A stretch of 64,000 nucleotides of DNA, taken from contig NC_043020.1 of NCBI RefSeq assembly GCF_006345805.1, positions 27,094,001 through 27,158,000 on the forward strand, written 5' to 3'. This stretch comes from Octopus sinensis (lineage: Eukaryota). Position numbers and translations under genes: made by a program. The notes beneath the pieces were generated by a model. That model did no database searches. It was not told the origin of the DNA and saw only the letters and a program-made list of their open reading frames with translations. This document shows positions 15,749 through 50,874 of the stretch, in pieces (within the stretch, counting starts at the first letter, position 1; each line of letters starts with the position of its first letter).

Positions 15749-16389
15749 TCGGCGTTTTTTTATTTTTTGGCAATTCTCTCCTGGGTTGGATAGGTTTACA
15801 TTATTGCTTCTTTCCAACTGTTGTTGTTGTTGTTGTGTTTAACCTTCATCCCGTCTCGTCTCGTACTCTGCAATTCTGAGAGATAACATACTTTCTTGGT
15901 TCTTCTCTGACGCTTGACCTTTCGGTTATTCTTTACATGTTTCAGATTCCATCTTGAAAGGTTTTAGTTGAACAAATCAATCCCAATGCTTACATTTTTT
16001 GGTTTTTCTTCAGTTTGGTACTTATTTTATCAGTTTCTTTTTGCCAAACTGTTAAGTTACATCATCATCGTTTAACGTCCGTTTTCCATGCTAGCATGGG
16101 TTGGATGGTTCGACCGGGGATCTGGGAAGCCAGAAGGCTGCACCAGGCTCCAGTCTGATCTGGCAATGTTTCTACAGCTGGATGCCCTTCCTAACGCCAA
16201 CCACTCCGTGAGTGTAGTGGGTGCTTTTTACGTGCCACCTGCACAGGTGCCAGGCGAGGCTGGCAACAGCCACGATCGGATTGGTGCTTTTTACGTGCCA
16301 CCGGCACGGAAGCCAGTCAAGTCAGCACTGGCATTGGCCACGATTCGGATGGTGGAATGACTAATATATATATGTGAGCCATTGTGCCT

Positions 16390-30731: not shown

Positions 30732-30942
30732 ATCTCATCAGCCTGACAGGAGGGTGCATGACAGACGCAGAGGTCGGGTGGTAGACCGATCTCGGCGCGA
30801 CCGGGATCGTGACAGGGACCGTGATCGAGACCGAGGCTTCGACCGAGATCGAGACCGGAGCAGAAGTCGTGATGGACGAGATAGAAAGGACCGACCCTCT
30901 CGGGAACGAGGGGACCGATACGAAGAAGGCTTTGATTGTGAT
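30732..30942 (+). CDS. RBM5: RBM5/10 coding exon 2: RD/RS-rich region
   Basis: tag|A TCT CAT completes AGA; RDRDRD repeats; GAT|gtaagt donor, phase 0. Confidence 0.9.
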
Positions 30943-31051
30943 GTAAGTTCAAAATATATATTTGCTATCTGTTTATTTTATCTTTTATCTTTTGTTTGGC
31001 CCTGTCATTAGACTGTAGCCATGCCGGGGCACTGCCTTGAAGGGTTTAGTC

Positions 31052-32197: not shown

Positions 32198-32347
32198 AGT
32201 TCTAGTCGTGATAGCGGGGAAAGTTTCAGGGACCAGGACAGCGGCCGAGAAGGTCGAGAGGACCGAGCTGGTGAGCGATGGATGACCGACACACCTACAC
32301 ACACCATTCTTCTAAGAGGACTTCCAAACCAGATTGACGAAAAGGAT
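32198..32347 (+). CDS. RBM5: RBM5/10 coding exon 3: start of RRM1 (TILLRGLP, RNP2)
   Basis: tttgcag acceptor, GAT|gtgagt donor, 150 nt. Confidence 0.93.
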
Positions 32348-33058
32348 GTGAGTTTGTTTTTTTTTCTCTTTCTCTCTCTCATTGTGCACATGCATGTGTA
32401 TGTGTGTGTGTATATATATATATATACACATATATCATCATCATCATCGTTTAACGTCCGTTTTCCGTGCTAGCATGGGTTGGACGGTTCGACCAGGGTC
32501 TGGGAAGCCAGGAGGCTGCTCCAGTCTGATCTGGCCGTGTTTCTACAGCTGGATGCCTTTCCTAACGCCAACCACTCTGCGAGTGTAGTGGGTGCTTTTT
32601 ACGTGCCACCGGCACAGGTGCCAAGGGAGTCTGGCAGCGGCCACGATCGGTTGGTGCTTTTAACGTGCCGCTGGCATCGGCCACATTCGGGTATGTATAT
32701 ATATGCATATATGTATATATATATGTGTGTATTGAATGTTGCAAAAGGTGAACAATGGTTGATTCCATATATTGGTTTCAAATTTTGGCACAAGGCCAGC
32801 AATTTCAGGGAAGGGAGTAGGTTGATTACATTGACCCCTCTGCTCAGCTGGTTCTTATCTTATCAACACCTGAAAGGCGAAGTCGAACTTGGCGGGATTT
32901 GAACTCAGAATAAATGCCACTAAACATTTTGCCCTGGTTTGCTAACAGTTCTGCCACCTCACCACCTTACTGATTCCATATATTCATGTGTATGTATGTA
33001 TGTGTGTATGTGCATGCATGTCATGGTTCGTAATTTTATTTCTTTCTGTATCTTGTAG

Positions 33059-33125
33059 ATATTGACGGAACTAATGATAATTGGACTCAGTGTCAAAGAC
33101 GTTCGATTAATGAGGAAAAGTTCCG
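33059..33125 (+). CDS. RBM5: RBM5/10 coding exon 4: RRM1 ILTELMIIGLSVKDVRLMRKSS
   Basis: tcttgtag acceptor, TCC G|gtgagt donor (phase 1); 67 nt, below the ORF-track cutoff; VRLMRK motif typical of the family. Confidence 0.92.
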
Positions 33126-36100
33126 GTGAGTGTTTTTTTTTCCTTTTTCATGTTATTTCATTTATTTTTCATAGATAAATTTATAAACAAATCTACTCAC
33201 TGAGGGGGTTCTGAGAATATTGAAACATATATATATGTATATATTATATATATATTTATTATATGATATATTTATATATATCTATATATAATATATGTAT
33301 GTGTATCTTGTATAAAATTGAAGGTGTGTTTTGTTGGATTTTTTAATGTATGTATGTATATATATATATATATATCTATATATATATTATTTTTTCTTTG
33401 TAAACTATGTTGGCTTTATTCACCAGGGTCTTTATTATTATTATTGTTATTATTATCTTGTAAAAGTTCTTGAATATATGATATGTAACCAAACTAATCT
33501 TCTCTTATTCACAGCTGTTTATCTTTGGAAGTCTTGTATAGTTAATCTGTTATGATATGTATTGATATCTGCCTTCATGAAATCACTGTCTTCTAATCTT
33601 GGTTTATACTCTTCACTGATTCACCTGTCTTCAGTGTTTTGAGATTGAGCCGGTTTTTACCTTTGCAAAACGGTGCTATTGTTGTTGTTGTTTAACCCTT
33701 ACACTGCTCCTGCTTGGGCAAACATTGTTTTAGTCATTACTACTTCCTTTGTTGTTTTCAAACATAGTGTATCTAAGACAATATTGTTGAGTGTATCTTG
33801 TTTTTTTGCTGCTGTTTCATATATATATATATATATTATATTAAATTAGCTGTGACACTAAGATGCTTTCATATACACCTTCTCCCTATATCTGTGTGTA
33901 AGTTCTTTTATTTGTTTCAGTCATTTGACTGCGGCCATGCTGGAGCATTGCCTGTAGTCAAACAAATCGGCCCCAGGACTTGTTCTTTGTAAGCCTAGTA
34001 CTTATTCTATCGGTCTCTTTTGCCGAACCGCTGCATTACGGGGACATAAACACACCAACATCGGTTGTCAGATGATGGCGAGGGGACAAACACAGACACA
34101 TATATACACGACAGGTTTCTTTCAGTTTCTGGCTACCAAATCCACTCACTGGGCTTTGGTTAGCCCAAGGCTATAGTAGAAGACACTTACCTAAGGTCCC
34201 TCACAGTGGGATGAGAACTCAGGACCATGTGGTTGGTAAGTAAGCTACTTACCACACAGCCACTCCTGAGTAAGCACATGAATGTGAAACAAGGTGGGGA
34301 AAAATTAGTATTCGACTACCTGAAGTAGAGTGATATGCTTCGTTATTAAAGTTGTGAAAAAACATCACAGAAATATCACAAAAAACTGCTACTCAGAGTT
34401 TCGCGTTCCCATTTGTCAGCCAGTTGTGATTAAGAATTCTTATGTATATGTGTGTGTGTGGGGGGATACGAATTTAATTTTCTTATGCCAAAGTTTATGC
34501 ATAACAAATCATTGGCTATTTGGCTCATACTTAAGATCCCTGTATTGAGTATGTTGTGTCAAACCAACCCTGATGGAGCTGAGTGAGAGCATAACAAAAG
34601 GGCCCTTTTGTCCACTTAAGATGTTTTGTCTTTGGAAGTGCATATGTGGGTGTGCTCAGTTCTTTTATTGTCTTTGGTCATCAGCTGCCCCAGCAACAAT
34701 GCTTCTGCTGAATTACTATTCTCTACTAGTAAGGATTATCTGTTCCTATGTATAGTGGCTGTCTCTTCCCCACACCTCTTGTGTCTGTGCTTGGTCAAAT
34801 TTTCTGAAAGGTCTGAACTTTTATGGTTGTATTTAATAAATTTGTGCCTTTTATTTTCCTTCCACTTCCCAAAAGTCTTTGGTCAACTTCTGTTGTTGAA
34901 AAACCACCACCACGACCATCCCGCCCCACAGAGGCCAGATTTAGTGACTACACCCCCCCCCCAACCTAAATTGTGCATTTTTGCAGATAACCTTGTTAAC
35001 TCTTTAGCTTTCAGATTACTCTATCTGGCTTAATGCTTATTTATCCACATTGTTTTGAATTAATCCTGCATTATCTTATCACTTCCAAGAGTTTCATAAT
35101 CTGATTGTTTGTTTTAACAATGGCATTGTAGGACAGGTGTAAAATGTTGGATCTAGCCATTTTGAACATAAAAAAGGCAGATTATTTGGGCCAGATATGA
35201 CTGCTTTAGATACGAAGAAAATTAAGTTTTAATTGCTACTAAATTGGACAAACTTTCTGGTCTTTTGCCTAGAAACAAATGTATTAATATGAGGAAATTG
35301 CGATAAACTCCAAAATTGTGTGAAGGCCCCCCCCTCAGCTGTGGCATATTTCACTTTAGCTCCAATCCAGTCCTGCCCACCACTGTTATCTCTCTCATCA
35401 ACATCTCAATTATCTTGTTGTGAAGATACAGAGCTGAAGACACCTCCGAAAGGGGGTGGGGGGCACCACGTCAAAACGGTACAGGAGTAGGGGCCGAAAC
35501 CGGACATGGTTCCTCTTGATGATGTCTTGAGCTAACTGGATCCTATAAAGGAGCTGTTGTGGTAGCAGACCACGAAACACGGTTGTAATTCCTTCCTTAG
35601 AGTCTTTTTAAATTCTTGGCTTCTTATAATTCCTGGCTGGTCTCTTGTTCGAACTCAGGTGTTTTTTGTAAACAGAAATAATCCATTACTTTCACTTTCA
35701 GCTTATCAACGTCTGTTTTCTTCTGGTAAGTAATGGCAAGTTTGATGCTTGACTCGTCACTCTTTTACTCAATCCTACCTTAACGATGTATTCATTTGCA
35801 TTAACCATTTTTTATCATTTTGAACAGGATACTGCTGTTAGCTGTGTGTGTTCATTAGCACATCAATGTAAAGTGCTTTACAATCTGATCAGTTCATATG
35901 TAACAATTATTTTGTAGATACATTGATTATTCTGTTAGAATTTTAATTGCTTAATTAGTTAAAATGGGGGAAAAGATGAGAAATTTAAAGTGTAGGTATT
36001 TGATCCTGAAGCTCCTGTTCTGTATAAGATAATTGCTGCTTCCATGATTGGATCAAAACACCTTGAGTCTACACACCTGAAGACATCAAAGTGACCATGC

Positions 36101-37078
36101 TTCACCTGCAGTTAGTAGGCTATTAATTAATTAATTGATTGATTGATTGATTGACTATTACACTGTGGTAGTTGTCCTGTGACTGATTTGTCTTATATTA
36201 CAATCAGTGGTTGATTCCTTTGGACAAAGTAACTTATTTTTTTCTTTTAATTTGTTTTCTTTGACTTGGTGACAGGTGAATTCTCATAAAGTACGAAGTG
36301 ACTATCTTGGAAAGAAATCATTTATCACTTTCATGATTTTTTATATTCTTTATGAGTCAGCTGCTGATGTACTTCAAGTAAAATTTCAATAGAATCTAGA
36401 TTTTTCTTGGAGTTTAGTAAAATATCTCTTACTTTATTACTGACGTACATTAAAATGTGTCACTCTGGCTCAACTGTTTTTGCTCTTTTTTTTAAATCTG
36501 GCAGTTTCAAGAAATAAGGATTAGAAAAATTACTCTGAATAATTTTTATTTGAATTTCCCAAAGGAAGGATTGGTCATCAGTGGGGTCAAGCTAGCAGAA
36601 TCATTAGTACACTGGACAAAAATGCTTAGCAGCATTTCTTCCAGCTTCATGTTCTGTATTTAAATTCCACCAAGGTCTACTCTGCCTTTGATCCTTTCAG
36701 TGTTGATAAAGTAGGTACCAGTCAAACACTGGGGTCAGTGAAAGTGACCAACCCATTCTACTCAAAGTTGCTAGCCTTGTGCCAAAACTAGAAAGAATTA
36801 TTATGTTCTGAAATTAAATTCTGTCACGGTCAGCTTTCCTTTCTGTCCTTTTGGGGTCAATCTAAAAAGGGTCAGTTAAGCACTGGGCTTGATGTTACCA
36901 ACTAGTTTCCCTGCCAAAGTTCAAGCTTGTGTTTATAGTAGAAAGGATTATTATTATTGTTGTTATTATATAATGGCACATTCAAACTTGTCTCCTCATC
37001 TTGGTTGCTATTGGGTTTAAAGGTTTTAATTTCCATTAACTAATTGCGCCATAGGACAACACAGTAGTGAATATAAAG

Positions 37079-37411
37079 GAAAAGACCCCTTTTGGTTATG
37101 ACCATGGGACTGCACCTAGAAAGTTCCCCTCCAAGGCACAAGTCTAGGCAAGGTTGTTTTATGGAAGACCAGCAGTCACCCATGCATACCAGCCTCCTCT
37201 CTCTGCCCCAGTGATGTTATCCAAGGGGAGGGCAAAGGGGCCGATACAGCTTGGCACCAGTGACATCACAACTCATTTCTACAACTGAATGAACTGGAGC
37301 AACATGAAACTGAGTGTCTTGCTCAAAAACACAACACACAGCCCAGTCCAGGAATTGAACTTGCTATCACATGATTGTGAGCCCAACACTCTAACCACTG
37401 AGCCATGTGCT
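37079..37411 (-). mobile_element. tRNA-derived SINE (family E-related, different tail); degraded relatives near 20760-20960, 29120-29545, 45430-45700
   Basis: Minus-strand head gcacatggctcagtggttagag..., tgtgtttttgagcaagacac core. Confidence 0.7.
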
Positions 37412-38291
37412 TGATTATAAGCATTAAGTATTTAAGTGTAGTAGGTTCAGTCCCAGAGTCAGTATACACATTCTCTGTCTGGTTGGAGCTGAAAAGCCAA
37501 GCAACGTGTAGGGGAATGATAAATTGAGAATATCTCTGATGTGGACAACAGAATAAGAACACACCATCCTTGTGGATTTGATAAAGGGTTCAGTTTGAAT
37601 TCCTGGAAATTTTACCTATCACAGTAGACACCTGGATAAAGTATAAAAAACCTGGTTAAAGTATAAAAAAACTGCATCCCTCTGCCAAACCATGTTGAGC
37701 CAGTGTGACAGAGAAGGCTCAAGTATGATCTCCAGTGCAAATTCATGGCCTCCACATCAGGCTGTGGTTGGTGGGTGGAACATACTGAGCCCTTCGTCCT
37801 CCTACACTGATTGAATATAGGCAATCCAGTTTAGTCCAATACTTTAGTCTATTTAGATTTACTATATTTTGTTTTTTATAACAAAAAACAAGTTGGTCTA
37901 ACTTTGGTCTCCATGTTGTTTTTTTCCCTCTCTTTAATTCTGTTTTGAATTTAATTTCTCGCTAAGAATCTATATTATATTTGTTCTTTGAAAACCCTTT
38001 TTTTTTTTTTTTTAAATGTGAGAGAAAATTATTAAATTAAAGAAAAAAAAGAGAAAAGATATTTTTTTTCTTTTCTTTTCTTATTAATCTCAAATCTCGC
38101 CAAAGAACCAAATGGTAAGTTTCTCAGAGAACCAACCAGCCTCAGTGAGTGGGTTTTTAGTCATTTATTATTATCTTTTTTTTTTTTTTTGACCTTGGGT
38201 TTCACGTGTTCTGGTTGGTTTCAGATGATAACCGCCATATTTTTTTAGAAATTAGTTCCACTAATGCGGGACATTCTGAATACTTACGCAG

Positions 38292-38365
38292 GTGCATCCC
38301 GTGGGTTTGCTTTTGTGGAGTTTCAGAACGTAGCAGATGCCCAGCGCTGGATGGAACAGAATCAG
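38292..38365 (+). CDS. RBM5: RBM5/10 coding exon 5: RRM1 RNP1 GASRGFAFVEFQNVADAQRWMEQNQ (74 nt)
   Basis: cgcag acceptor at 38291, CAG|gtctta weak donor; phases 1 to 0 fit both neighbours. Confidence 0.93.
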
Positions 38366-38633
38366 GTCTTACACAATTATCTAAGACTTTTGTACCGGTA
38401 CAGTAGACCCCAAAAAAAAAAAAAAAAAATTACCATGCCCCCCTTTCCATACAGACACACACACATGCATACATACACACACACACATACAGACTGACAA
38501 TCCCACACACCTATGTTTGCTTGCATATATATATATATATAAATATATGTGTATATTTAGATATTACATGCATATATATATATGTATATATATTTGTTAT
38601 ATACAGCAGACATGCTCATACATTGCTACAGTG

Positions 38634-38671
<38 letters not shown>

Positions 38672-41600
38672 GTATATGTATACATACACATATACATACG
38701 TATACATGCACACATACATATGCACACACATTTACACTCACACATGCATACAGTCATACATACACACTTATATACACACTCATATACATCCTACATGACT
38801 CCCAGTCAATTGCTGTCTCAAGCAGTTTGTACGCTGCTCAATTTTATTCTTTCTTAATGTTGTTTGTTGTTTCTGTTTCGTTTTTTTTTTTTTTTTTTTC
38901 TCCATATACTTTGTTTAAATAAAGGTTTCTGTCTAATTTTAAATAACCAAAATGCTATTACTACTGCTACGATATCATTTATGGTCCTTTTTTTTTTTTA
39001 ATATTTCCCCCCTCTCTCTCTCTCTCTCTCGCTCTCCTTACCCAGATGAGTATCTTTAGCTACACACACACTCACACGTAACCTGTGTGCTAGACTAAAT
39101 GCCATACCATTCATCTTGCATTCATGATTCCAAAGTACCGCCTTCCTTTAATCATTTTCCCGTTCTATCTTGTTATAGTCGATGTTATTGTTAAACCCCA
39201 GGTCAGCTCTGATTCAAGCACACCTACGATCAAAAGCACTCCAGCTGTGACAATCCCATCTTTTCAGGAGTAGGAAGACTACATTATTTAATGCAGGGGT
39301 TTTCAACCATTTTTCTGCCCATGGACGCCTTTGGTTATTTTTTTTACTCTGGTGGACCCTCCCATATTGATTTAGTGATTTGACGTTTAAAAACTAGTTT
39401 TATAGATACTTCATTTGAAATTCCTGTTTACTTGTGTCGGCTTGCAATAGAAATCTTTGAGGGATTATCTTTGTGGTGCACCTGAGCACTGTATACAATA
39501 ATTTCATTATTATGATTATTATTTTTATTATTGTCTTTCACTGGCCAGAAACATGTTGAACTAAACTTATGTAAAACCCAAGAGAAAGGAACATAGTTGT
39601 TCCTTGCAATAAATTCATCATCATCATCATTATCATCGTTGTTTATCGTCAGCCTTCCATGCTGGTATGGGTTGGATGGTTTGACAGGAGCTGGCCAGGC
39701 AGAGGACTGCACCACATTACTGTGTCTGGTTTAGCAGGGTTTTCATGGCATAAGCACAGCATGGTCGCAATGACTGAAGCAATAAATGAAGAATGTAGAC
39801 CTAGATATATTCAAAAAGATAGGACGGGTGTAGCTGGAATGCTTTTGGTTGTACCGTTGCTCAGTTGAAGCTGACTTTGGACTATAAACTACAACAACTC
39901 CATAAGATTGAACTTTCCACAATTTAATAACACATTGGGTCGTAATCTCATTGCTGGAGATTTAGCCTTTGTCTAGTGTTGAGGACGTATGAGCTTGTTA
40001 AAAGCCTGTATCAATTCCTCATCATTCTGTCCTTTTGGTTGAGATGAAAATGTTCAACTTAGCCATGATAAAGGCTTGGTGCCAATTAATACCCACAAAA
40101 TCCATTGTTTCAACACATTAGACCCAACATTTTATTTATCTGACCTGTTAACGCTACATTAATAGAAATAAAATAGTTATGAATTTCTCCAGCCCTGATT
40201 TTGTTTTTGTGTTTTTAGAAAAAGGGTATGCAAAAAAAAAAAAAACACTCAAAACAGGTTTTCTATCTGAGAAATATTCCGTGGGAATGGGTCGGTCGTT
40301 TTTGTTCAGTTTTGTCTCCATTTGTCTTGTCTGTATTTTTGTTGATAAATTCCAATCTCACCATTTCATACACAACAACACTCTTTGCTTACAAAACTCT
40401 TTCTTTCCCTTCAAATCTTTGAAGATTTCTAAATTAAAATTTTTTCACCAATTCACCACATGCACATAACCTGCATATAAAAAAACTGCACCACATTATT
40501 TTATTTTATTTCTTTTTTTTTTCATTTTTGTTTTATATATTTTTTTTTTGTAAACTGAAAAACTGAAATGTTTAGAGAAAATTTCAAATTAAAAATAATA
40601 ATAATAAATGCTATCTGCTTTCTTAATTTAATATTGAGCTTTTTGCAGCATGCTTCCTCAGTTGAAATGATGCCCTATAAAAAAAATTTTTAAAACGAAA
40701 GAAAGAAGATTTAGTTTAAACAATGCATGAGAATTCTTCTTGTTGTAATTATATATTCTGGTTAACATCTATTAGTTGATAGTGTTTCTCTCTCTCTTTC
40801 TTTCCCTCCTTTGTTCTTGTGCGGGTTCAGTTTCTGAACTTACCGAAATAGTGCAGTGTGTCTGCCGGCATTATTGTTTGTTGAATAAGTTGTAAGGTCT
40901 TTGAAACAATGATCGAGAACAGTTTTGATTTACATTTCAAAACATGGTTGGGAAACTCATAAAGGACAGTCAACCAGTCAGATAAACATAGACAGACAGA
41001 CAGACAGACCAGTGGGTAGGTGGGGGAGAATGTTGGAAATTGCTGTCAACCTATATTTAGTTATTGTTATTGTAGTTCTGTTATCTAGAATGGAATTCTA
41101 CCCCGTTCTCTCTTTTCTCTGACAATCAGTCATAAAATTTTGTTTTGGGACCCAGATTTTTTTTTATTATTGAAAACCCCACTATTACAAAATACATCCT
41201 ACCAAGGAGCCTCGACCTGGACTCTCAACCTACTAGAAGTTGCTGCCAGATCTCCCTCAAACCATTGTCTAATGTAGTTTTGGTCATGCTTCATTGATGA
41301 ATAACCAACACTGAGTTAAACACTAACACCACCACCACCAACGACAACAACATCGTTTGTTGCCTGTTTTCAGACCCTGGATGTATGATGTAATAGAAAG
41401 AATGAGAAGCTGAGCCCTACACAAGCAAACCCAGCTTCATATTGTGTTGCTTCTGTGTATGGATGCCAAACCTCAAATCTGCCATTTGCCACAAATCCTG
41501 TGAGTGGATTTGGTAGATGGAAACTATGTTGAAGCCTTCTGTGTGTGTGTGTGTGTGTGGTTTGTTTGGCAATGCAAACAGAATTAGCACTAAACTTGAG

Positions 41601-42206
41601 TCAAACTATTCAACAAAAAAAAAAAAAGAAAGAAAAAAACTTCAAAGCAGTGCTCCAGCATGGCTGCAGGTCAATGACTGCAACAAATAAAAGATGGGTT
41701 CGAATTAAGGGAGATTTGGCTGCTATTTTCTTGCGGGTTGACCAACCATCTAGATGCCCCCCCCCCATTAGCTTGTTTTGTTTCTTATTTGAAGTGTGTT
41801 GTGTCTCTGCTGTGTATATTACTGTTTCTCAATTCTTTATCCCACCCGTTGCCTTCTGCCCCTTGTCCATATGTCGGTCTTTCACTCTGATTAGAGATCA
41901 CGAACCCCCCCATCCTCGTCATGCAGTTCTGTGTTGATATATTGGTTATATAATGTGTCTGAATTTGGGTAGTGATGTCTTCTCCTTGTCTCCTCTCTCT
42001 TTCCAATGCACACACACACGTTGGCTGTTCAGACATTAGATATTTCTCTTTCATTTCATTCAGGCAAACATTACAAATAGTTTTTTGCTGCACACATGTA
42101 TATGTTTATTTATTTATATATATATATATATAATATATATATAATATATATATATATAAATGTGTGTGTGTGTGTATGTATTTGTGTATGTATGTCTATG
42201 TGTGTG

Positions 42207-42294
<88 letters not shown>

Positions 42295-42707
42295 CGTATG
42301 TATGTGTGTGTGTGTATATATATAGTATATCCTTGGTTTTTTTTTTTTAAGTTACACATTATTTTTATTGTGATTTCCTGTTATTTTTATTTTTTCCATT
42401 CCTCTACACCTGCACATCACATTTAAACACATCCACACACCCATTCCCACACAACTTTTTCCTTTTTTTTTTTTTAATTTTTCAAAGATATTAGCTAAAC
42501 TAAAATATTTAGCATGCAGTTGCTTGTTTTGAAACTAATAGCTTGTCTACTTTCACTTTCCTGTCTCTCTCTCTCTCTTTCTCTCATATTCCACATTTAA
42601 GATATTCAAATGTAGCTTCAAAGAGGTTTTTTTAAACATTTTGTGAAAGAAGGAAAGGGCTTCAGTACATTTTTAACACATCTCTGTTTGATATGAGCAC
42701 TATAAGA

Positions 42708-43088: not shown

Positions 43089-44310
43089 TAATAAAAATCA
43101 TTAGTCTGTCCCTCCTACAATCCGTTTCTAGGGCATTCTTGTTGGGTTTTTTTTCCTCTCTCTCTCTCTCTCTCATTAGTCCCTTATTTCAATGAACTAA
43201 TTGAAATTTTTGTTCCAAACCATCCTAATTTATTTATTTAATGTGGATTCTATAGCAGTAAGCAACCAAATGTTTGTTCTTTGCAAAGCGAAATTGTGTC
43301 ATGGCTTCCCAGCAGAACTTGCACATGATTTCCTGTCTGTCATCTCTTTCTTCGTTCTGTGCTCTTCTGCCTCCTCCTCTTTTCATGCTACCACACCCCC
43401 AAACCCCATCTCACCACCTCAGCTCAGCTTTGCTCAGCTCCATTTTTTTTTTTTTTCTTTAATTTCAATGTCTTCCCTTGCCAGAGTTTTTTTTTTTTTT
43501 CCTTTTTTTTTCTTTTTAATCACCCTGCCAATTAATTCATTAATTAACTATGATGATGATGTTGATAGCTGCTATTATTAGTGCTCTCTTACTACTACTA
43601 CTATTACTACTACTGTCCTTCTGAAACTTCTAGTATAACTCACACACATATACACAACAACAATATCCATCTCCACACACACATACACCCTTATCACCAG
43701 TTCAGGGTTTCAAACCCTGTCGGTTGATATCTAGTTTTTTTTTCCCCCAAATATTTTAACAAGGGTTTTTTTTTCGTTTATAATTTTTTTCATACAATTT
43801 ATCAATTATTGGCTTAGATAGGAAATCATGCCTCGTTAGCTTAATAAATTATATTATATATATATATTTTAAAAAAAAGCAATTGTACATTTTTTTTCTT
43901 GATAGATTTTTTTTTAACCATAAACTTTTGTGTTTATTTCTACTTTAGAGATGTTACTGTTTTCTGTAGAATAAAAAAAAAAGAAAAAAATGAGAGAGAA
44001 AACATATGCATGTATATATATATATATGTATGTATATATATATATATATGTATGTATATGTGTGTATATATATATAGATATTTATATATATATATTTATA
44101 TGTTACTTGTATCTTTTGTCTACCTACATTGATATTAAGTACTACTACTACCTACTACTACTACTACTAGACGTCACGTTGACCTGAGGCTTCCGAAGAC
44201 ATACTTGATGTGTGTCCTGAACCTAGATCATGGCATTGGCAAAATGGATGATGTGTTGCTACCACATGGTTTCCGTTTCATTGATACTGACTTCCTTCTT
44301 TTGCTTCCAG

Positions 44311-44412
44311 GGGTCGCTCTACCTGCAGGACCAGTTCCATGTCACTATGCACTACAGTCAGCCCAAAATGGGGCCTGAGAAGGTACAGAAGTGTGACTGG
44401 GTTTGTACGAAG
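44311..44412 (+). CDS. RBM5: RBM5/10 coding exon 6: RRM1 end and first half of RanBP2 ZnF (MHYSQPK...DWVCTK)
   Basis: tactgac branch, pyrimidine tract and cag; AAG|gtaagt donor. Confidence 0.95.
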
Positions 44413-50022: not shown

Positions 50023-50874
50023 CAAGGTCTGATCAGTAAGTATCTGGACTGTCGCCATAGCAACGAAGCTAAAGCAGGCAAAGTGAAGCCGCTCGGCACA
50101 GATTGACCTTGGACTCTGCTGTGCAGGCACACTAAGTTTTAAGGTTCTAGTTCACTTCCGCTGTTTACAGCAATGCTTGGAAGGAAGGTGTGGAGTGTGT
50201 TATCGTTGTGTTGACCATGACAAAGTTATCATGGTGATACCTGCTCAGAGGCCTACGCAAAGTTGCAGGAAGTGTATGGAGAGAAGTGTATGTGTTGTAC
50301 ACAAGTGTACGAGCGGTTCAGACGTTTCCAGGATGGTAAAAAAACTGTCAATATTGACAAACATTCTTGGAGATCCGCAACCAGCAGAACTGAGAAAAAC
50401 ACCACAGATGTGAAGGGGGAAATCATCGAATCACCATCCATGAGTTATCAGAAAATGTGCAGATTAGTTACAGTTCAGTTCAGTCCGTTATCACTGAAGA
50501 TTTGGGTATGATACGCGCGTCTGCCAAGTTTGTGCCAAAACTGATATCAGCTGACCAAAAAGACATTTGGGTTTCAGTTGCACAAGATCTCCTTGATTGT
50601 ATTGAGAATGATGAAAACTTCTTGAAAACATTGTGTAGGCTTCTGAACAGGTATCGCCAAGCATTTGGCAAAATCTGATGCAGATCCTCTGCTGAACTTT
50701 CTCTGCCATAGTCAATGTGACAATCACACGTTACACATATTCCTTCCAAGCTCAGCTGTAAACAGCAGAAGTGAGTTAACTCGTTAAAACTTAGTGCGCA
50801 GAGTTCAAGATCAATCTGTGTGCGTTAGCTTTATTCCTATGGCAACAGTCCGGATACTTACTGATCGGGCCACG
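50023..50874. mobile_element. Defective mariner element with two 5' ends in inverted orientation
   Basis: TIRs gatcagtaagtatc(t/c)ggactgt at both ends; transposase N-terminal fragments GDTCSEAYAKLQEVYG...KFVPKL (+) and MAEKVQQRICIRFCQMLGDTCSEAY (-). Confidence 0.85.

What the first reader, a model, noticed from the sequence alone, without database searches (positions are those of the whole stretch)
38062..38150. Candidate in-frame microexon with two alternative donors (9 nt EPN or 39 nt) in the RRM1 beta2-beta3 loop
Seen: a pyrimidine run at 38062-38092 and ccaaAG at 38105 are followed by AACCAAATG|GTAAGT (perfect donor, 9 nt). An alternative donor ...CCTCA|GTGAGT at 38145 gives 39 nt. Both lengths keep the frame and have no stop in phase 1: KSS-EPN-GASRG or KSS-EPNGKFLREPTSL-SASRG. 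The site lies 147-177 nt upstream of the RNP1 exon in non-repeat sequence. Inference: a tissue-specific (possibly neural) insert in the loop that tunes RRM specificity. Nine-nucleotide exons are routinely missed by annotation.
Basis: partly seen in the sequence, partly recalled or inferred. Interest (0 to 1): 0.7.

Follow-up and report, generated by a model that had tools for sequence, protein, structure and literature searches.

The report
Unconfirmed 9-nt pseudo-exon in RBM5/10 intron

Summary
A 22-nt pure pyrimidine run, one AG (38104-5), 9 nt, and ATG|GTAAGT are followed 30 nt later by TCA|GTGAGT. Both exon lengths are in frame and stop-free in the phase-1 intron between the beta2 exon (33059-33125) and the RNP1 exon (38292-38365) of an RBM5/RBM10 orthologue.

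The interpretation could not be confirmed, and the evidence leans against it.
- In-frame, stop-free AG...GTRAGT pseudo-exons occur 37-38 times per 64 kb per strand. A second 9-nt look-alike with a good pyrimidine tract sits at 50027-50035.
- All RNA-derived sequences from relatives that span this junction join exon 4 directly to exon 5. One is an octopod whose exon 5 is 74/74 identical to the window.
- Intron similarity to other lineages stops about 60 nt upstream of exon 5, short of the candidate.
- The UGC motif typical of neural microexons is absent.

One lineage (L014) has a similar layout with a 12-nt in-frame option, and GTRAGT recurs 95-240 nt upstream of exon 5 in 4 of 6 other lineages. 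This recurrence is weak: 2 of 4 in the lineages fetched after the idea was formed, P about 0.085.

The clearly constrained element is the RNP1 exon itself: ultraconserved, with a weak donor and a retained downstream intron.

The parts
33059..33125 (+). Exon 4 of the RBM5/RBM10 orthologue. It is 67 nt and encodes ILTELMIIGLSVKDVRLMRKSS plus the first base of a Gly codon. Its donor is G|GTGAGT.
   Evidence: tblastn with human RBM5 and reading of the sequence
33126..38291 (+). Intron 4: 5166 nt, phase 1, 64% A+T. It contains the candidate.
38040..38059 (+). Purine run (AAGAAAAAAAAGAGAAAAGA). It can pair with the pyrimidine tract that follows (hairpin -13 kcal/mol, z = -2).
38062..38083 (+). Pure 22-nt pyrimidine tract, the putative polypyrimidine tract. 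It is one of 21 such runs of 20 nt or more on this strand of the window.
38084..38088 (+). TTAAT, a possible branch-point match (yUnAy), 18 nt upstream of the AG.
   Evidence: read from the sequence; inference only
38104..38105 (+). Candidate acceptor AG. Position -3 is A. It is the first AG after a 45-nt AG-free zone. No TGC lies between the tract and the AG.
38106..38114 (+). Candidate 9-nt exon AACCAAATG, which would insert Glu-Pro-Asn.
38115..38120 (+). GTAAGT, a consensus 5' splice-site hexamer. It is the third best of 322 GT dinucleotides in the intron on an approximate consensus matrix.
38128..38144 (+). Second AG (38128-9) plus 15 nt AACCAACCAGCCTCA, a third in-frame option (EPTSL). 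AGAACCAA is repeated from 38104-38111, which suggests a small local duplication.
38145..38150 (+). GTGAGT, the second 5' splice-site-like hexamer. It gives the 39-nt version.
38231..38291 (+). The only part of intron 4 with significant similarity to other lineages. It contains the branch-point consensus ACTAAT (38260-38265) and a poor pyrimidine tract before CAG.
38292..38365 (+). Exon 5, the RNP1 exon: 74 nt, encoding (G)ASRGFAFVEFQNVADAQRWMEQNQ. Its donor CAG|GTCTTA (38366-38371) is very weak. It is 74/74 identical to a related octopod whose exons 3 and 4 are only 73.5% and 78.5% identical.

Best explanation
The candidate is most likely a pseudo-exon. It is a chance juxtaposition, in a 5.2-kb AT-rich and low-complexity intron, of a T-rich run, a single AG, and two hexamers that match the 5' splice-site consensus. 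It is spliced rarely or not at all, and it does not encode a selected insert in the RRM1 loop. The normal mRNA joins exon 4 (33059-33125) directly to exon 5 (38292-38365).

Shown: the motifs exist, the frame is kept, and relatives' transcripts have the direct junction.
Inferred: the site is not used in this species.
For: (1) Background rate.
- There are 37 (+) and 38 (-) in-frame stop-free AG..3n..GTRAGT combinations per 64 kb, and 5 in this intron alone.
- A second 9-nt site with a 95% pyrimidine tract and GTAAGT lies at 50027-50035.
- The + strand carries 21 pure pyrimidine runs of 20 nt or more.

(2) Transcript-derived sequences from relatives all show exon 4 joined to exon 5 with no insert.
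- L097/P0102 is an octopod with exon 5 100% identical to the window; its junction reads AGTTCTG|GTGCATCC.
- The others are L001/P0001, P0007, P0135 and P0155.

(3) Conservation.
- Significant intron similarity to other lineages covers only -60 to -1.
- The -300 to -61 segment is not significantly similar in L003-5, L012 or L015, and is borderline (P = 0.06) in L006.

(4) Acceptor quality.
- It has A at position -3.
- Only 12/20 pyrimidines lie in -23 to -4.
- The tract is displaced 21 nt upstream and can be sequestered in a hairpin with the adjacent A-run.
- There is no UGC near the 3' splice site, a hallmark of SRRM/eMIC-dependent microexons (PMC8797185).

(5) Among about 75 family members, the length of this loop varies by only a few residues, and none has a 13-residue insert.
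Against: - The donor is strong, and the tract plus 45-nt AG-free zone plus TTAAT resemble microexon architecture.
- All three possible exon lengths keep the frame and lack stops.
- L014, an unidentified relative, has a similar layout: A-run, TTTTCTTTTAATC, AAG, a 12-nt in-frame option, ATG|GTAAGT, AACCAAC, and a second GTAAGT 33 nt on. Its flanks align best to the window site out of 71 GTRAGT sites (local alignment P = 0.035).
- GTRAGT lies 95-240 nt upstream of exon 5 in 4 of 6 other lineages.
- No reads from this species, and no intron from a close relative, could be examined. One assembled contig per species cannot exclude a minor or tissue-specific isoform.
Confidence: 0.55

Rival explanations
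1. The site would be a genuine, frame-preserving alternative microexon, possibly specific to octopods. It would be 9 nt, with 15-nt and 39-nt variants, and would insert 3-13 residues into the RNA-contacting beta2-beta3 loop of RRM1, changing RNA binding in some tissues.
For: - It has a strong GTAAGT donor, a long pyrimidine tract, a 45-nt AG-free zone and a branch-point-like TTAAT.
- All versions are in frame and stop-free.
- The insertion point lies between RNA-contacting residues of the homologous human RBM5 RRM1 (PMC10349855).
- A strong branch-point consensus downstream (ACTAAT, 38260-38265) fits what is described for fly microexons (PMC8797185).
- L014 has a 12-nt in-frame analogue at the equivalent place.
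Against: - No insert appears in any relative's transcript, including the close octopod L097 and P0135, whose exon 5 peptide is identical to that of L014.
- The peptide is not conserved (EPN against VSSY), and the long form has a TAA stop in L014.
- In L014 a stronger CAG acceptor would give a 5-nt frameshifting exon.
- There is no UGC motif, and the acceptor is poor.
- The chance background is high.
Confidence: 0.15
2. The conserved feature would be the intronic 5' splice-site-like motif, not a coding insert. U1 snRNP bound 100-240 nt upstream of the weak RNP1 exon would define a decoy or unproductive pseudo-exon. That pseudo-exon would modulate removal of intron 4 or inclusion of exon 5, as part of the gene's autoregulation by intron retention or exon skipping coupled to NMD.
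For: - GTRAGT occurs at -95 to -240 in the window, L003-5, L006-11, L014 and L096. On L003, L004 and L005 it is the only GTAAGT on the contig's + strand. Density is about 0.2-0.6 per kb in most loci.
- With the best upstream acceptors, the pseudo-exons are out of frame with stops in L003 (74 nt) and L006 (58 nt). This was read.
- Exon 5 has a conserved weak donor, a strong conserved branch point, and nucleotide-level ultraconservation.
- RNA contigs of five species retain intron 5, and L003 also retains the 3' part of intron 4.
- RBM10 autoregulates, and regulates RBM5, by exon-6 skipping with conserved flanking introns in human (PMC5737846).
Against: - The motif is absent within 600-1000 nt in L012/13 and L015.
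- In the four lineages fetched after the idea was formed, only 2 of 4 have it (expected about 0.13 each, P about 0.085).
- The flanks are not alignable except in L014.
- In the window itself, inclusion would be in frame and harmless, so it cannot act through NMD there.
- That human exon 6 corresponds to this exon was not verified.
Confidence: 0.25

Closest known systems
Neural (SRRM3/4 or eMIC-dependent) microexons of bilaterians
   Same: Length of 9 nt, a multiple of three, falling in a surface loop of a structured domain. Long upstream pyrimidine tract, long AG-free zone, strong downstream branch point.
   Different: No UGC motif next to the 3' splice site. No detectable conservation of the exon or its flanks in the lineages available. 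No inclusion in any transcript seen. The 39-nt version is longer than the usual limit of 27 nt.
Decoy or poison pseudo-exons and detained introns in autoregulated splicing-factor genes (for example RBM10/RBM5 exon-6 AS-NMD, PMC5737846)
   Same: It lies in a splicing-regulator gene beside an exon with weak splice signals, nucleotide-level ultraconservation and a retained neighbouring intron. Consensus donors recur upstream of that exon in several lineages.
   Different: In this window, inclusion would not create a stop or a frameshift. The recurrence is statistically weak and is absent in two lineages.
Recursive splice sites (AG|GTAAGT ratchet points)
   Same: A consensus GTAAGT deep in a long intron, preceded by a pyrimidine tract and an AG.
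   Different: The AG is 9 nt upstream of the GT, so splicing to it would not regenerate a 5' splice site. Only L006 has AAG|GTAAGT juxtaposed.

Membership tests
SRRM/eMIC-dependent neural microexon | Exon of 3-27 nt, a multiple of 3, open in frame | tested here: met
   The 9-nt (EPN) and 15-nt (EPTSL) versions are open in phase 1. The 39-nt version is open but longer than 27 nt.
SRRM/eMIC-dependent neural microexon | UGC motif close to the 3' splice site, between the pyrimidine tract and the AG (PMC8797185) | tested here: not met
   There is no TGC anywhere in 38060-38105.
SRRM/eMIC-dependent neural microexon | Long pyrimidine tract, long AG exclusion zone, branch-point consensus | tested here: met
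   A 22-nt pure pyrimidine run, a 45-nt AG-free zone, and TTAAT 18 nt upstream of the AG. Such tracts are common here, with 21 on this strand.
SRRM/eMIC-dependent neural microexon | Exon and flanking intron conserved across related species | tested here: inconclusive
   Not alignable in L003-5, L006, L012/13, L015 or L096. L014 has a similar layout but a different peptide. No intron from a close octopod could be obtained.
SRRM/eMIC-dependent neural microexon | Junction-spanning RNA evidence with neural-enriched inclusion | not testable with these tools
   No reads or transcripts of this species are in the collections. Relatives' assembled transcripts lack any insert.
RBM5/RBM6/RBM10 family (host gene) | RRM1, RanBP2-type zinc finger, RRM2 and the OCRE region in this order. 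The G-patch expected downstream was not found in the window. | tested here: met
   tblastn with human RBM5 and with the L003 protein finds all of these on the + strand between 32.2 and 63.1 kb. The G-patch would lie beyond the window end. L003 carries OCRE and G-patch by Pfam.
Poison exon (AS-NMD) | Inclusion introduces a premature stop or a frameshift | tested here: not met
   All three versions in the window are 3n and stop-free. The equivalents in L003, L006 and the long form in L014 do carry stops.
Recursive splice site | AG immediately followed by GTRAGT, so that a 5' splice site is regenerated | tested here: not met
   The AG at 38104-5 is separated from the GT at 38115 by 9 nt.

The most novel reading that the evidence does not exclude
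Octopods would have evolved a pair of tandem, frame-preserving microexons (AG|AACCAA...|GTRAGT, apparently duplicated). These would insert EPN, EPTSL or a 13-residue segment into the RNA-contacting beta2-beta3 loop of RRM1 of their single RBM5/RBM10-type splicing regulator, giving tissue-specific variants with altered target recognition. A related layout in L014 would point to an older origin with a fast-evolving peptide.
Probability: 0.12. Interest if true: 0.55.

Novelty: not a real feature. Interest (0 to 1): 0.22.

Why it matters
If the microexon were real, it would change the RNA-binding loop of a master alternative-splicing regulator in an animal known for transcriptome plasticity, and annotation would have missed it. 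On present evidence it is better read as a warning: in AT-rich cephalopod introns, motif-perfect in-frame pseudo-exons arise by chance at about 0.6 per kb. The more solid result is a by-product. The RNP1 exon of this gene and its flanks behave like an ultraconserved regulatory cassette, with a weak donor, a strong branch point and a retained downstream intron in several species. That fits an ancient autoregulatory loop like the one described for human RBM10 and RBM5.

Tried and rejected
- The exact 77-aa ORF across exon 5 was looked up and is not on record.
- Two protein searches with window sequence found no transcript or genomic contig of this species or genus.
- MAFFT alignment of the upstream intron with L003-5 looked suggestive. 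blastn and shuffled-background local alignment showed that only -60 to -1 is truly similar, so that alignment was discarded.
- Rfam (evalue mode) over 33.0-44.4 kb gave only sub-threshold microRNA-family matches on TA/CA microsatellites and nothing at the candidate.
- Self-BLAST found no repeat family covering the core.
- The metagenome scan with the RRM1 profile returned mostly contigs with only generic RRM similarity and no usable orthologous intron.
- Run accessions could not be tied to species through the paper library.
- Literature searches found no report of a microexon in RBM5/RBM10 RRM1 and no octopus microexon list that could be queried.
- I could not verify that human exon 6 is the homologue of this exon.
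- Dinucleotide shuffles were rejected as a null for the pyrimidine-tract criterion, because they destroy the real low-complexity runs. The real window on both strands was used instead.

Full report
**What is there**

The window is eukaryotic genomic DNA. It is AT-rich, rich in microsatellites, and resembles cephalopod sequence. An RBM5/RBM10-type gene lies on the + strand.
- the RNP2 exon of RRM1 at 32198-32347
- a 67-nt exon at 33059-33125, encoding ILTELMIIGLSVKDVRLMRKSS plus one G
- the 74-nt RNP1 exon at 38292-38365, encoding (G)ASRGFAFVEFQNVADAQRWMEQNQ
- the end of RRM1 at 44311-44412
- the RanBP2 zinc finger near 46.8 kb
- RRM2 at 48.96-49.24 kb
- OCRE-region exons at 59.5-63.1 kb

Intron 4 (33126-38291, 5166 nt) is phase 1 and splits the Gly codon of the beta2-beta3 loop. 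In the human RBM5 RRM1-ZnF1/RNA structure, M132/K133 at the end of beta2 and R140 of RNP1 contact RNA (PMC10349855). An insert here would therefore sit between RNA-contacting residues.

**Check of the observation**

Every coordinate and translation is correct.
- 38062-38083 is a pure 22-nt pyrimidine run.
- The AG is at 38104-5.
- AACCAAATG is 38106-38114.
- GTAAGT is 38115-20.
- GTGAGT is 38145-50.
- The inserts read EPN and EPNGKFLREPTSL(S), without stops.

I add a third in-frame option: AG at 38128-9 plus 15 nt, giving EPTSL. The octamer AGAACCAA occurs at both acceptors (38104-11 and 38128-35), which suggests a small local duplication. The core is unique in the window. Rfam finds nothing there.

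**Chance**

Counting AG + 3n (up to 51 nt, stop-free in this phase) + GTRAGT:
- Intron 4 has five combinations. Three are at this site, and two are elsewhere, at 33850 and 35702.
- Dinucleotide shuffles of the intron give a mean of 1.6 (P = 0.07).
- The real window has 37 on the + strand and 38 on the - strand.

Requiring at least 18/20 pyrimidines upstream leaves only this site and a second 9-nt site at 50027-50035 on the + strand, and none on the - strand. The + strand carries 21 pure pyrimidine runs of 20 nt or more, so the tract is not special.

On an approximate consensus matrix recalled from memory, ATG|GTAAGT scores 9.8, third of 322 GTs in the intron. Exons 4 and 6 score 11.7 and 11.9. 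The acceptor is mediocre: A at position -3, 12/20 pyrimidines in -23 to -4, and the tract displaced 21 nt upstream. The tract can pair with the adjacent purine run (-13 kcal/mol, z = -2).

Overall this is the best-looking pseudo-exon in the window. Roughly one of this quality is expected per window by chance.

**Microexon code**

SRRM/eMIC-dependent microexons have these features (PMC8797185):
- long AG-free zones
- long pyrimidine tracts
- strong CUAAY branch points

Here the AG-free zone (45 nt), the tract and a TTAAT are present. No TGC occurs between 38060 and 38105.

**RNA evidence from relatives**

The protein collections hold nothing from this species. The representative-library search returned P0102. 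Its contig L097 (Logan SRR24189495) is a spliced transcript of a related octopod. Compared with the window:
- exon 3 is 73.5% identical
- exon 4 is 78.5% identical
- exon 5 is 74/74 identical
- the first 43 aligned nt of intron 5 are 42/43 identical

Its exon 4 to exon 5 junction is direct...AGTTCTG|GTGCATCC....

These other RNA-derived sequences also join the two exons with no insert:
- P0001/L001 and P0007, from another mollusc-like species. P0034 shows that this species does have intron 4.
- P0135, whose exon 5 peptide is identical to that of L014.
- P0155.

One assembled contig per species cannot exclude a minor or tissue-specific isoform. No support was found.

**Conservation of the genomic site**

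Genomic or unspliced contigs covering the 3' part of intron 4 were obtained for six other lineages. Their species are unknown.
- L003 and L004/5
- L006-11
- L012/13
- L014
- L015
- L096

Significant similarity to the window covers only about 60 nt upstream of exon 5 plus the exon itself. The -300 to -61 segment gives the following against a background of real intronic segments:
- not significant for L003-5, L012 and L015
- borderline for L006 (P = 0.06)
- P = 0.035 for L014

In L014 the layout is similar: A-run, TTTTCTTTTAATC, AAG, 12 nt (TGAGCAGTTATG, in frame, VSSY), ATG|GTAAGT, AACCAAC, and a second GTAAGT 33 nt further on. When flanks are aligned anchored on the donor, the window site ranks first of 71 GTRAGT sites, but only narrowly (18.0 against 17.5 and 17.0).

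Three things argue against a conserved coding microexon in L014. The peptide differs. A stronger CAG acceptor would give a 5-nt exon. The long form contains TAA.

**A side hypothesis I formed and tested**

A consensus donor sits upstream of exon 5 at these positions:
- -177 and -147 in the window
- -232 to -238 in L003-5
- -152 in L006-11
- -136 and -103 in L014
- -95 in L096

There is none within 600-1000 nt in L012/13 and L015.

Taking a typical density of about 0.5 per kb, the chance is about 0.13 per lineage for a 240-nt stretch. Four of six gives P of about 0.003. The idea was formed on the first two lineages, however. In the four fetched afterwards it is 2 of 4, P of about 0.085. I therefore treat a functional intronic donor (decoy or unproductive pseudo-exon) as a live but weak rival.

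**What is clearly constrained**

Several observations single out exon 5 and its immediate flanks.
- Exon 5 is 72-91% identical at the nucleotide level among all lineages, including synonymous sites.
- It is 100% identical to L097, where neighbouring exons are about 75% identical.
- Its donor is non-consensus everywhere: GTCTTA, GTTGTT, GTTGAA, GTTTTA, GTTGAT, GTTTAA, GTGTTG, GTCAAA.
- A CTAAY branch-point consensus sits about 27-33 nt upstream in seven of eight lineages.
- RNA contigs of five species retain intron 5 while other introns are spliced: L097/P0102, L001, L003, P0135 and P0155.
- Skipping the 74-nt exon would shift the frame.

This resembles the AS-NMD autoregulation of human RBM10 and RBM5 through exon 6, which has conserved flanking introns (PMC5737846). 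I could not verify that human exon 6 is this exon.

**Verdict**

My confidences are:
- unused or noise-level pseudo-exon: 0.55
- regulatory intronic donor or decoy: 0.25
- genuine frame-preserving microexon: 0.15

Junction-read searches in octopus RNA-seq and comparison of intron 4 among octopod genomes would settle it.

Noticed in passing
window 38292-38410: The RNP1 exon (74 nt) is 74/74 identical, and the first 43 aligned nt of intron 5 are 42/43 identical, to a related octopod transcript (L097, SRR24189495). Exons 3 and 4 of the same transcript are only 73.5% and 78.5% identical to the window. This points to an ultraconserved exon-intron block, which suggests a regulatory RNA element.
   Followed up: partly
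window 38366-38371; L001 475-480; L003 498-503; L006 4337-4342; L012, L014, L015, L096: The donor of the RNP1 exon is far from consensus in every lineage (GTCTTA, GTCAAA, GTTGTT, GTTGAA, GTTTTA, GTTGAT, GTTTAA, GTGTTG). RNA-derived contigs or proteins of five species (L097/P0102, L001/P0001, L003, P0135, P0155) read through into intron 5 while other introns are spliced. This suggests a conserved retained or detained intron.
   Followed up: partly
window 38231-38291 (ACTAAT at 38260-38265): This is the only part of intron 4 alignable to other lineages. It has a CTAAY branch-point consensus 27-33 nt upstream of exon 5 (in 7 of 8 lineages), followed by a pyrimidine-poor stretch. L003-6 share TTCTAATG(C/A)GTG(A/C)CAATTTAAATC.
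   Followed up: partly
window 38115 and 38145; L003 190; L004 444; L005 248; L006 4111; L014 598 and 631; L096 ~662: A consensus GTRAGT recurs 95-240 nt upstream of the RNP1 exon in 5 of 7 lineages. On L003, L004 and L005 it is the only GTAAGT on the contig's + strand. It is absent in L012/13 and L015. In the lineages fetched after the idea was formed it is 2 of 4 (P about 0.085).
   Followed up: yes
window 38104-38111 and 38128-38135: AGAACCAA is repeated 24 nt apart. Each copy starts with a potential acceptor AG and is followed by a GTRAGT. This looks like a small tandem duplication of the pseudo-exon unit. AACCAAC also follows the first GTAAGT in L014.
   Followed up: no
window 50027-50035: A second 9-nt look-alike: a 95% pyrimidine tract, AAG, GTCTGATCA, then GTAAGT, in the intron after the RRM2 exon. 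It was used here as a background example. Its frame in its own intron was not checked.
   Followed up: no
window 38040-38083: A purine run and the following pyrimidine run form an A-U-rich hairpin (-13 kcal/mol, z = -2). This would sequester the putative polypyrimidine tract.
   Followed up: partly
window 38457-38731, 42172-42332, 44002-44069: TA/CA microsatellite stretches give sub-threshold Rfam matches to repeat-derived microRNA families (mir-297, mir-466, mir-1277). These are almost certainly low-complexity artefacts.
   Followed up: no
window ~32430-32720 and ~15917-16318: A repeated element (…GGGTTGGACG…CCAGGAGGCTGC…CTTTCCTAACGCCAACCACTC…GTGCTTTTTACGTGCC…) occurs in intron 3 and again about 16 kb upstream. 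It looks like an interspersed, SINE-like repeat.
   Followed up: no
window 30814-30952: This stretch matches the Arg/Asp-rich N-terminal coding part of the L097 transcript at 72%. It is probably exon 2 of the same gene.
   Followed up: no
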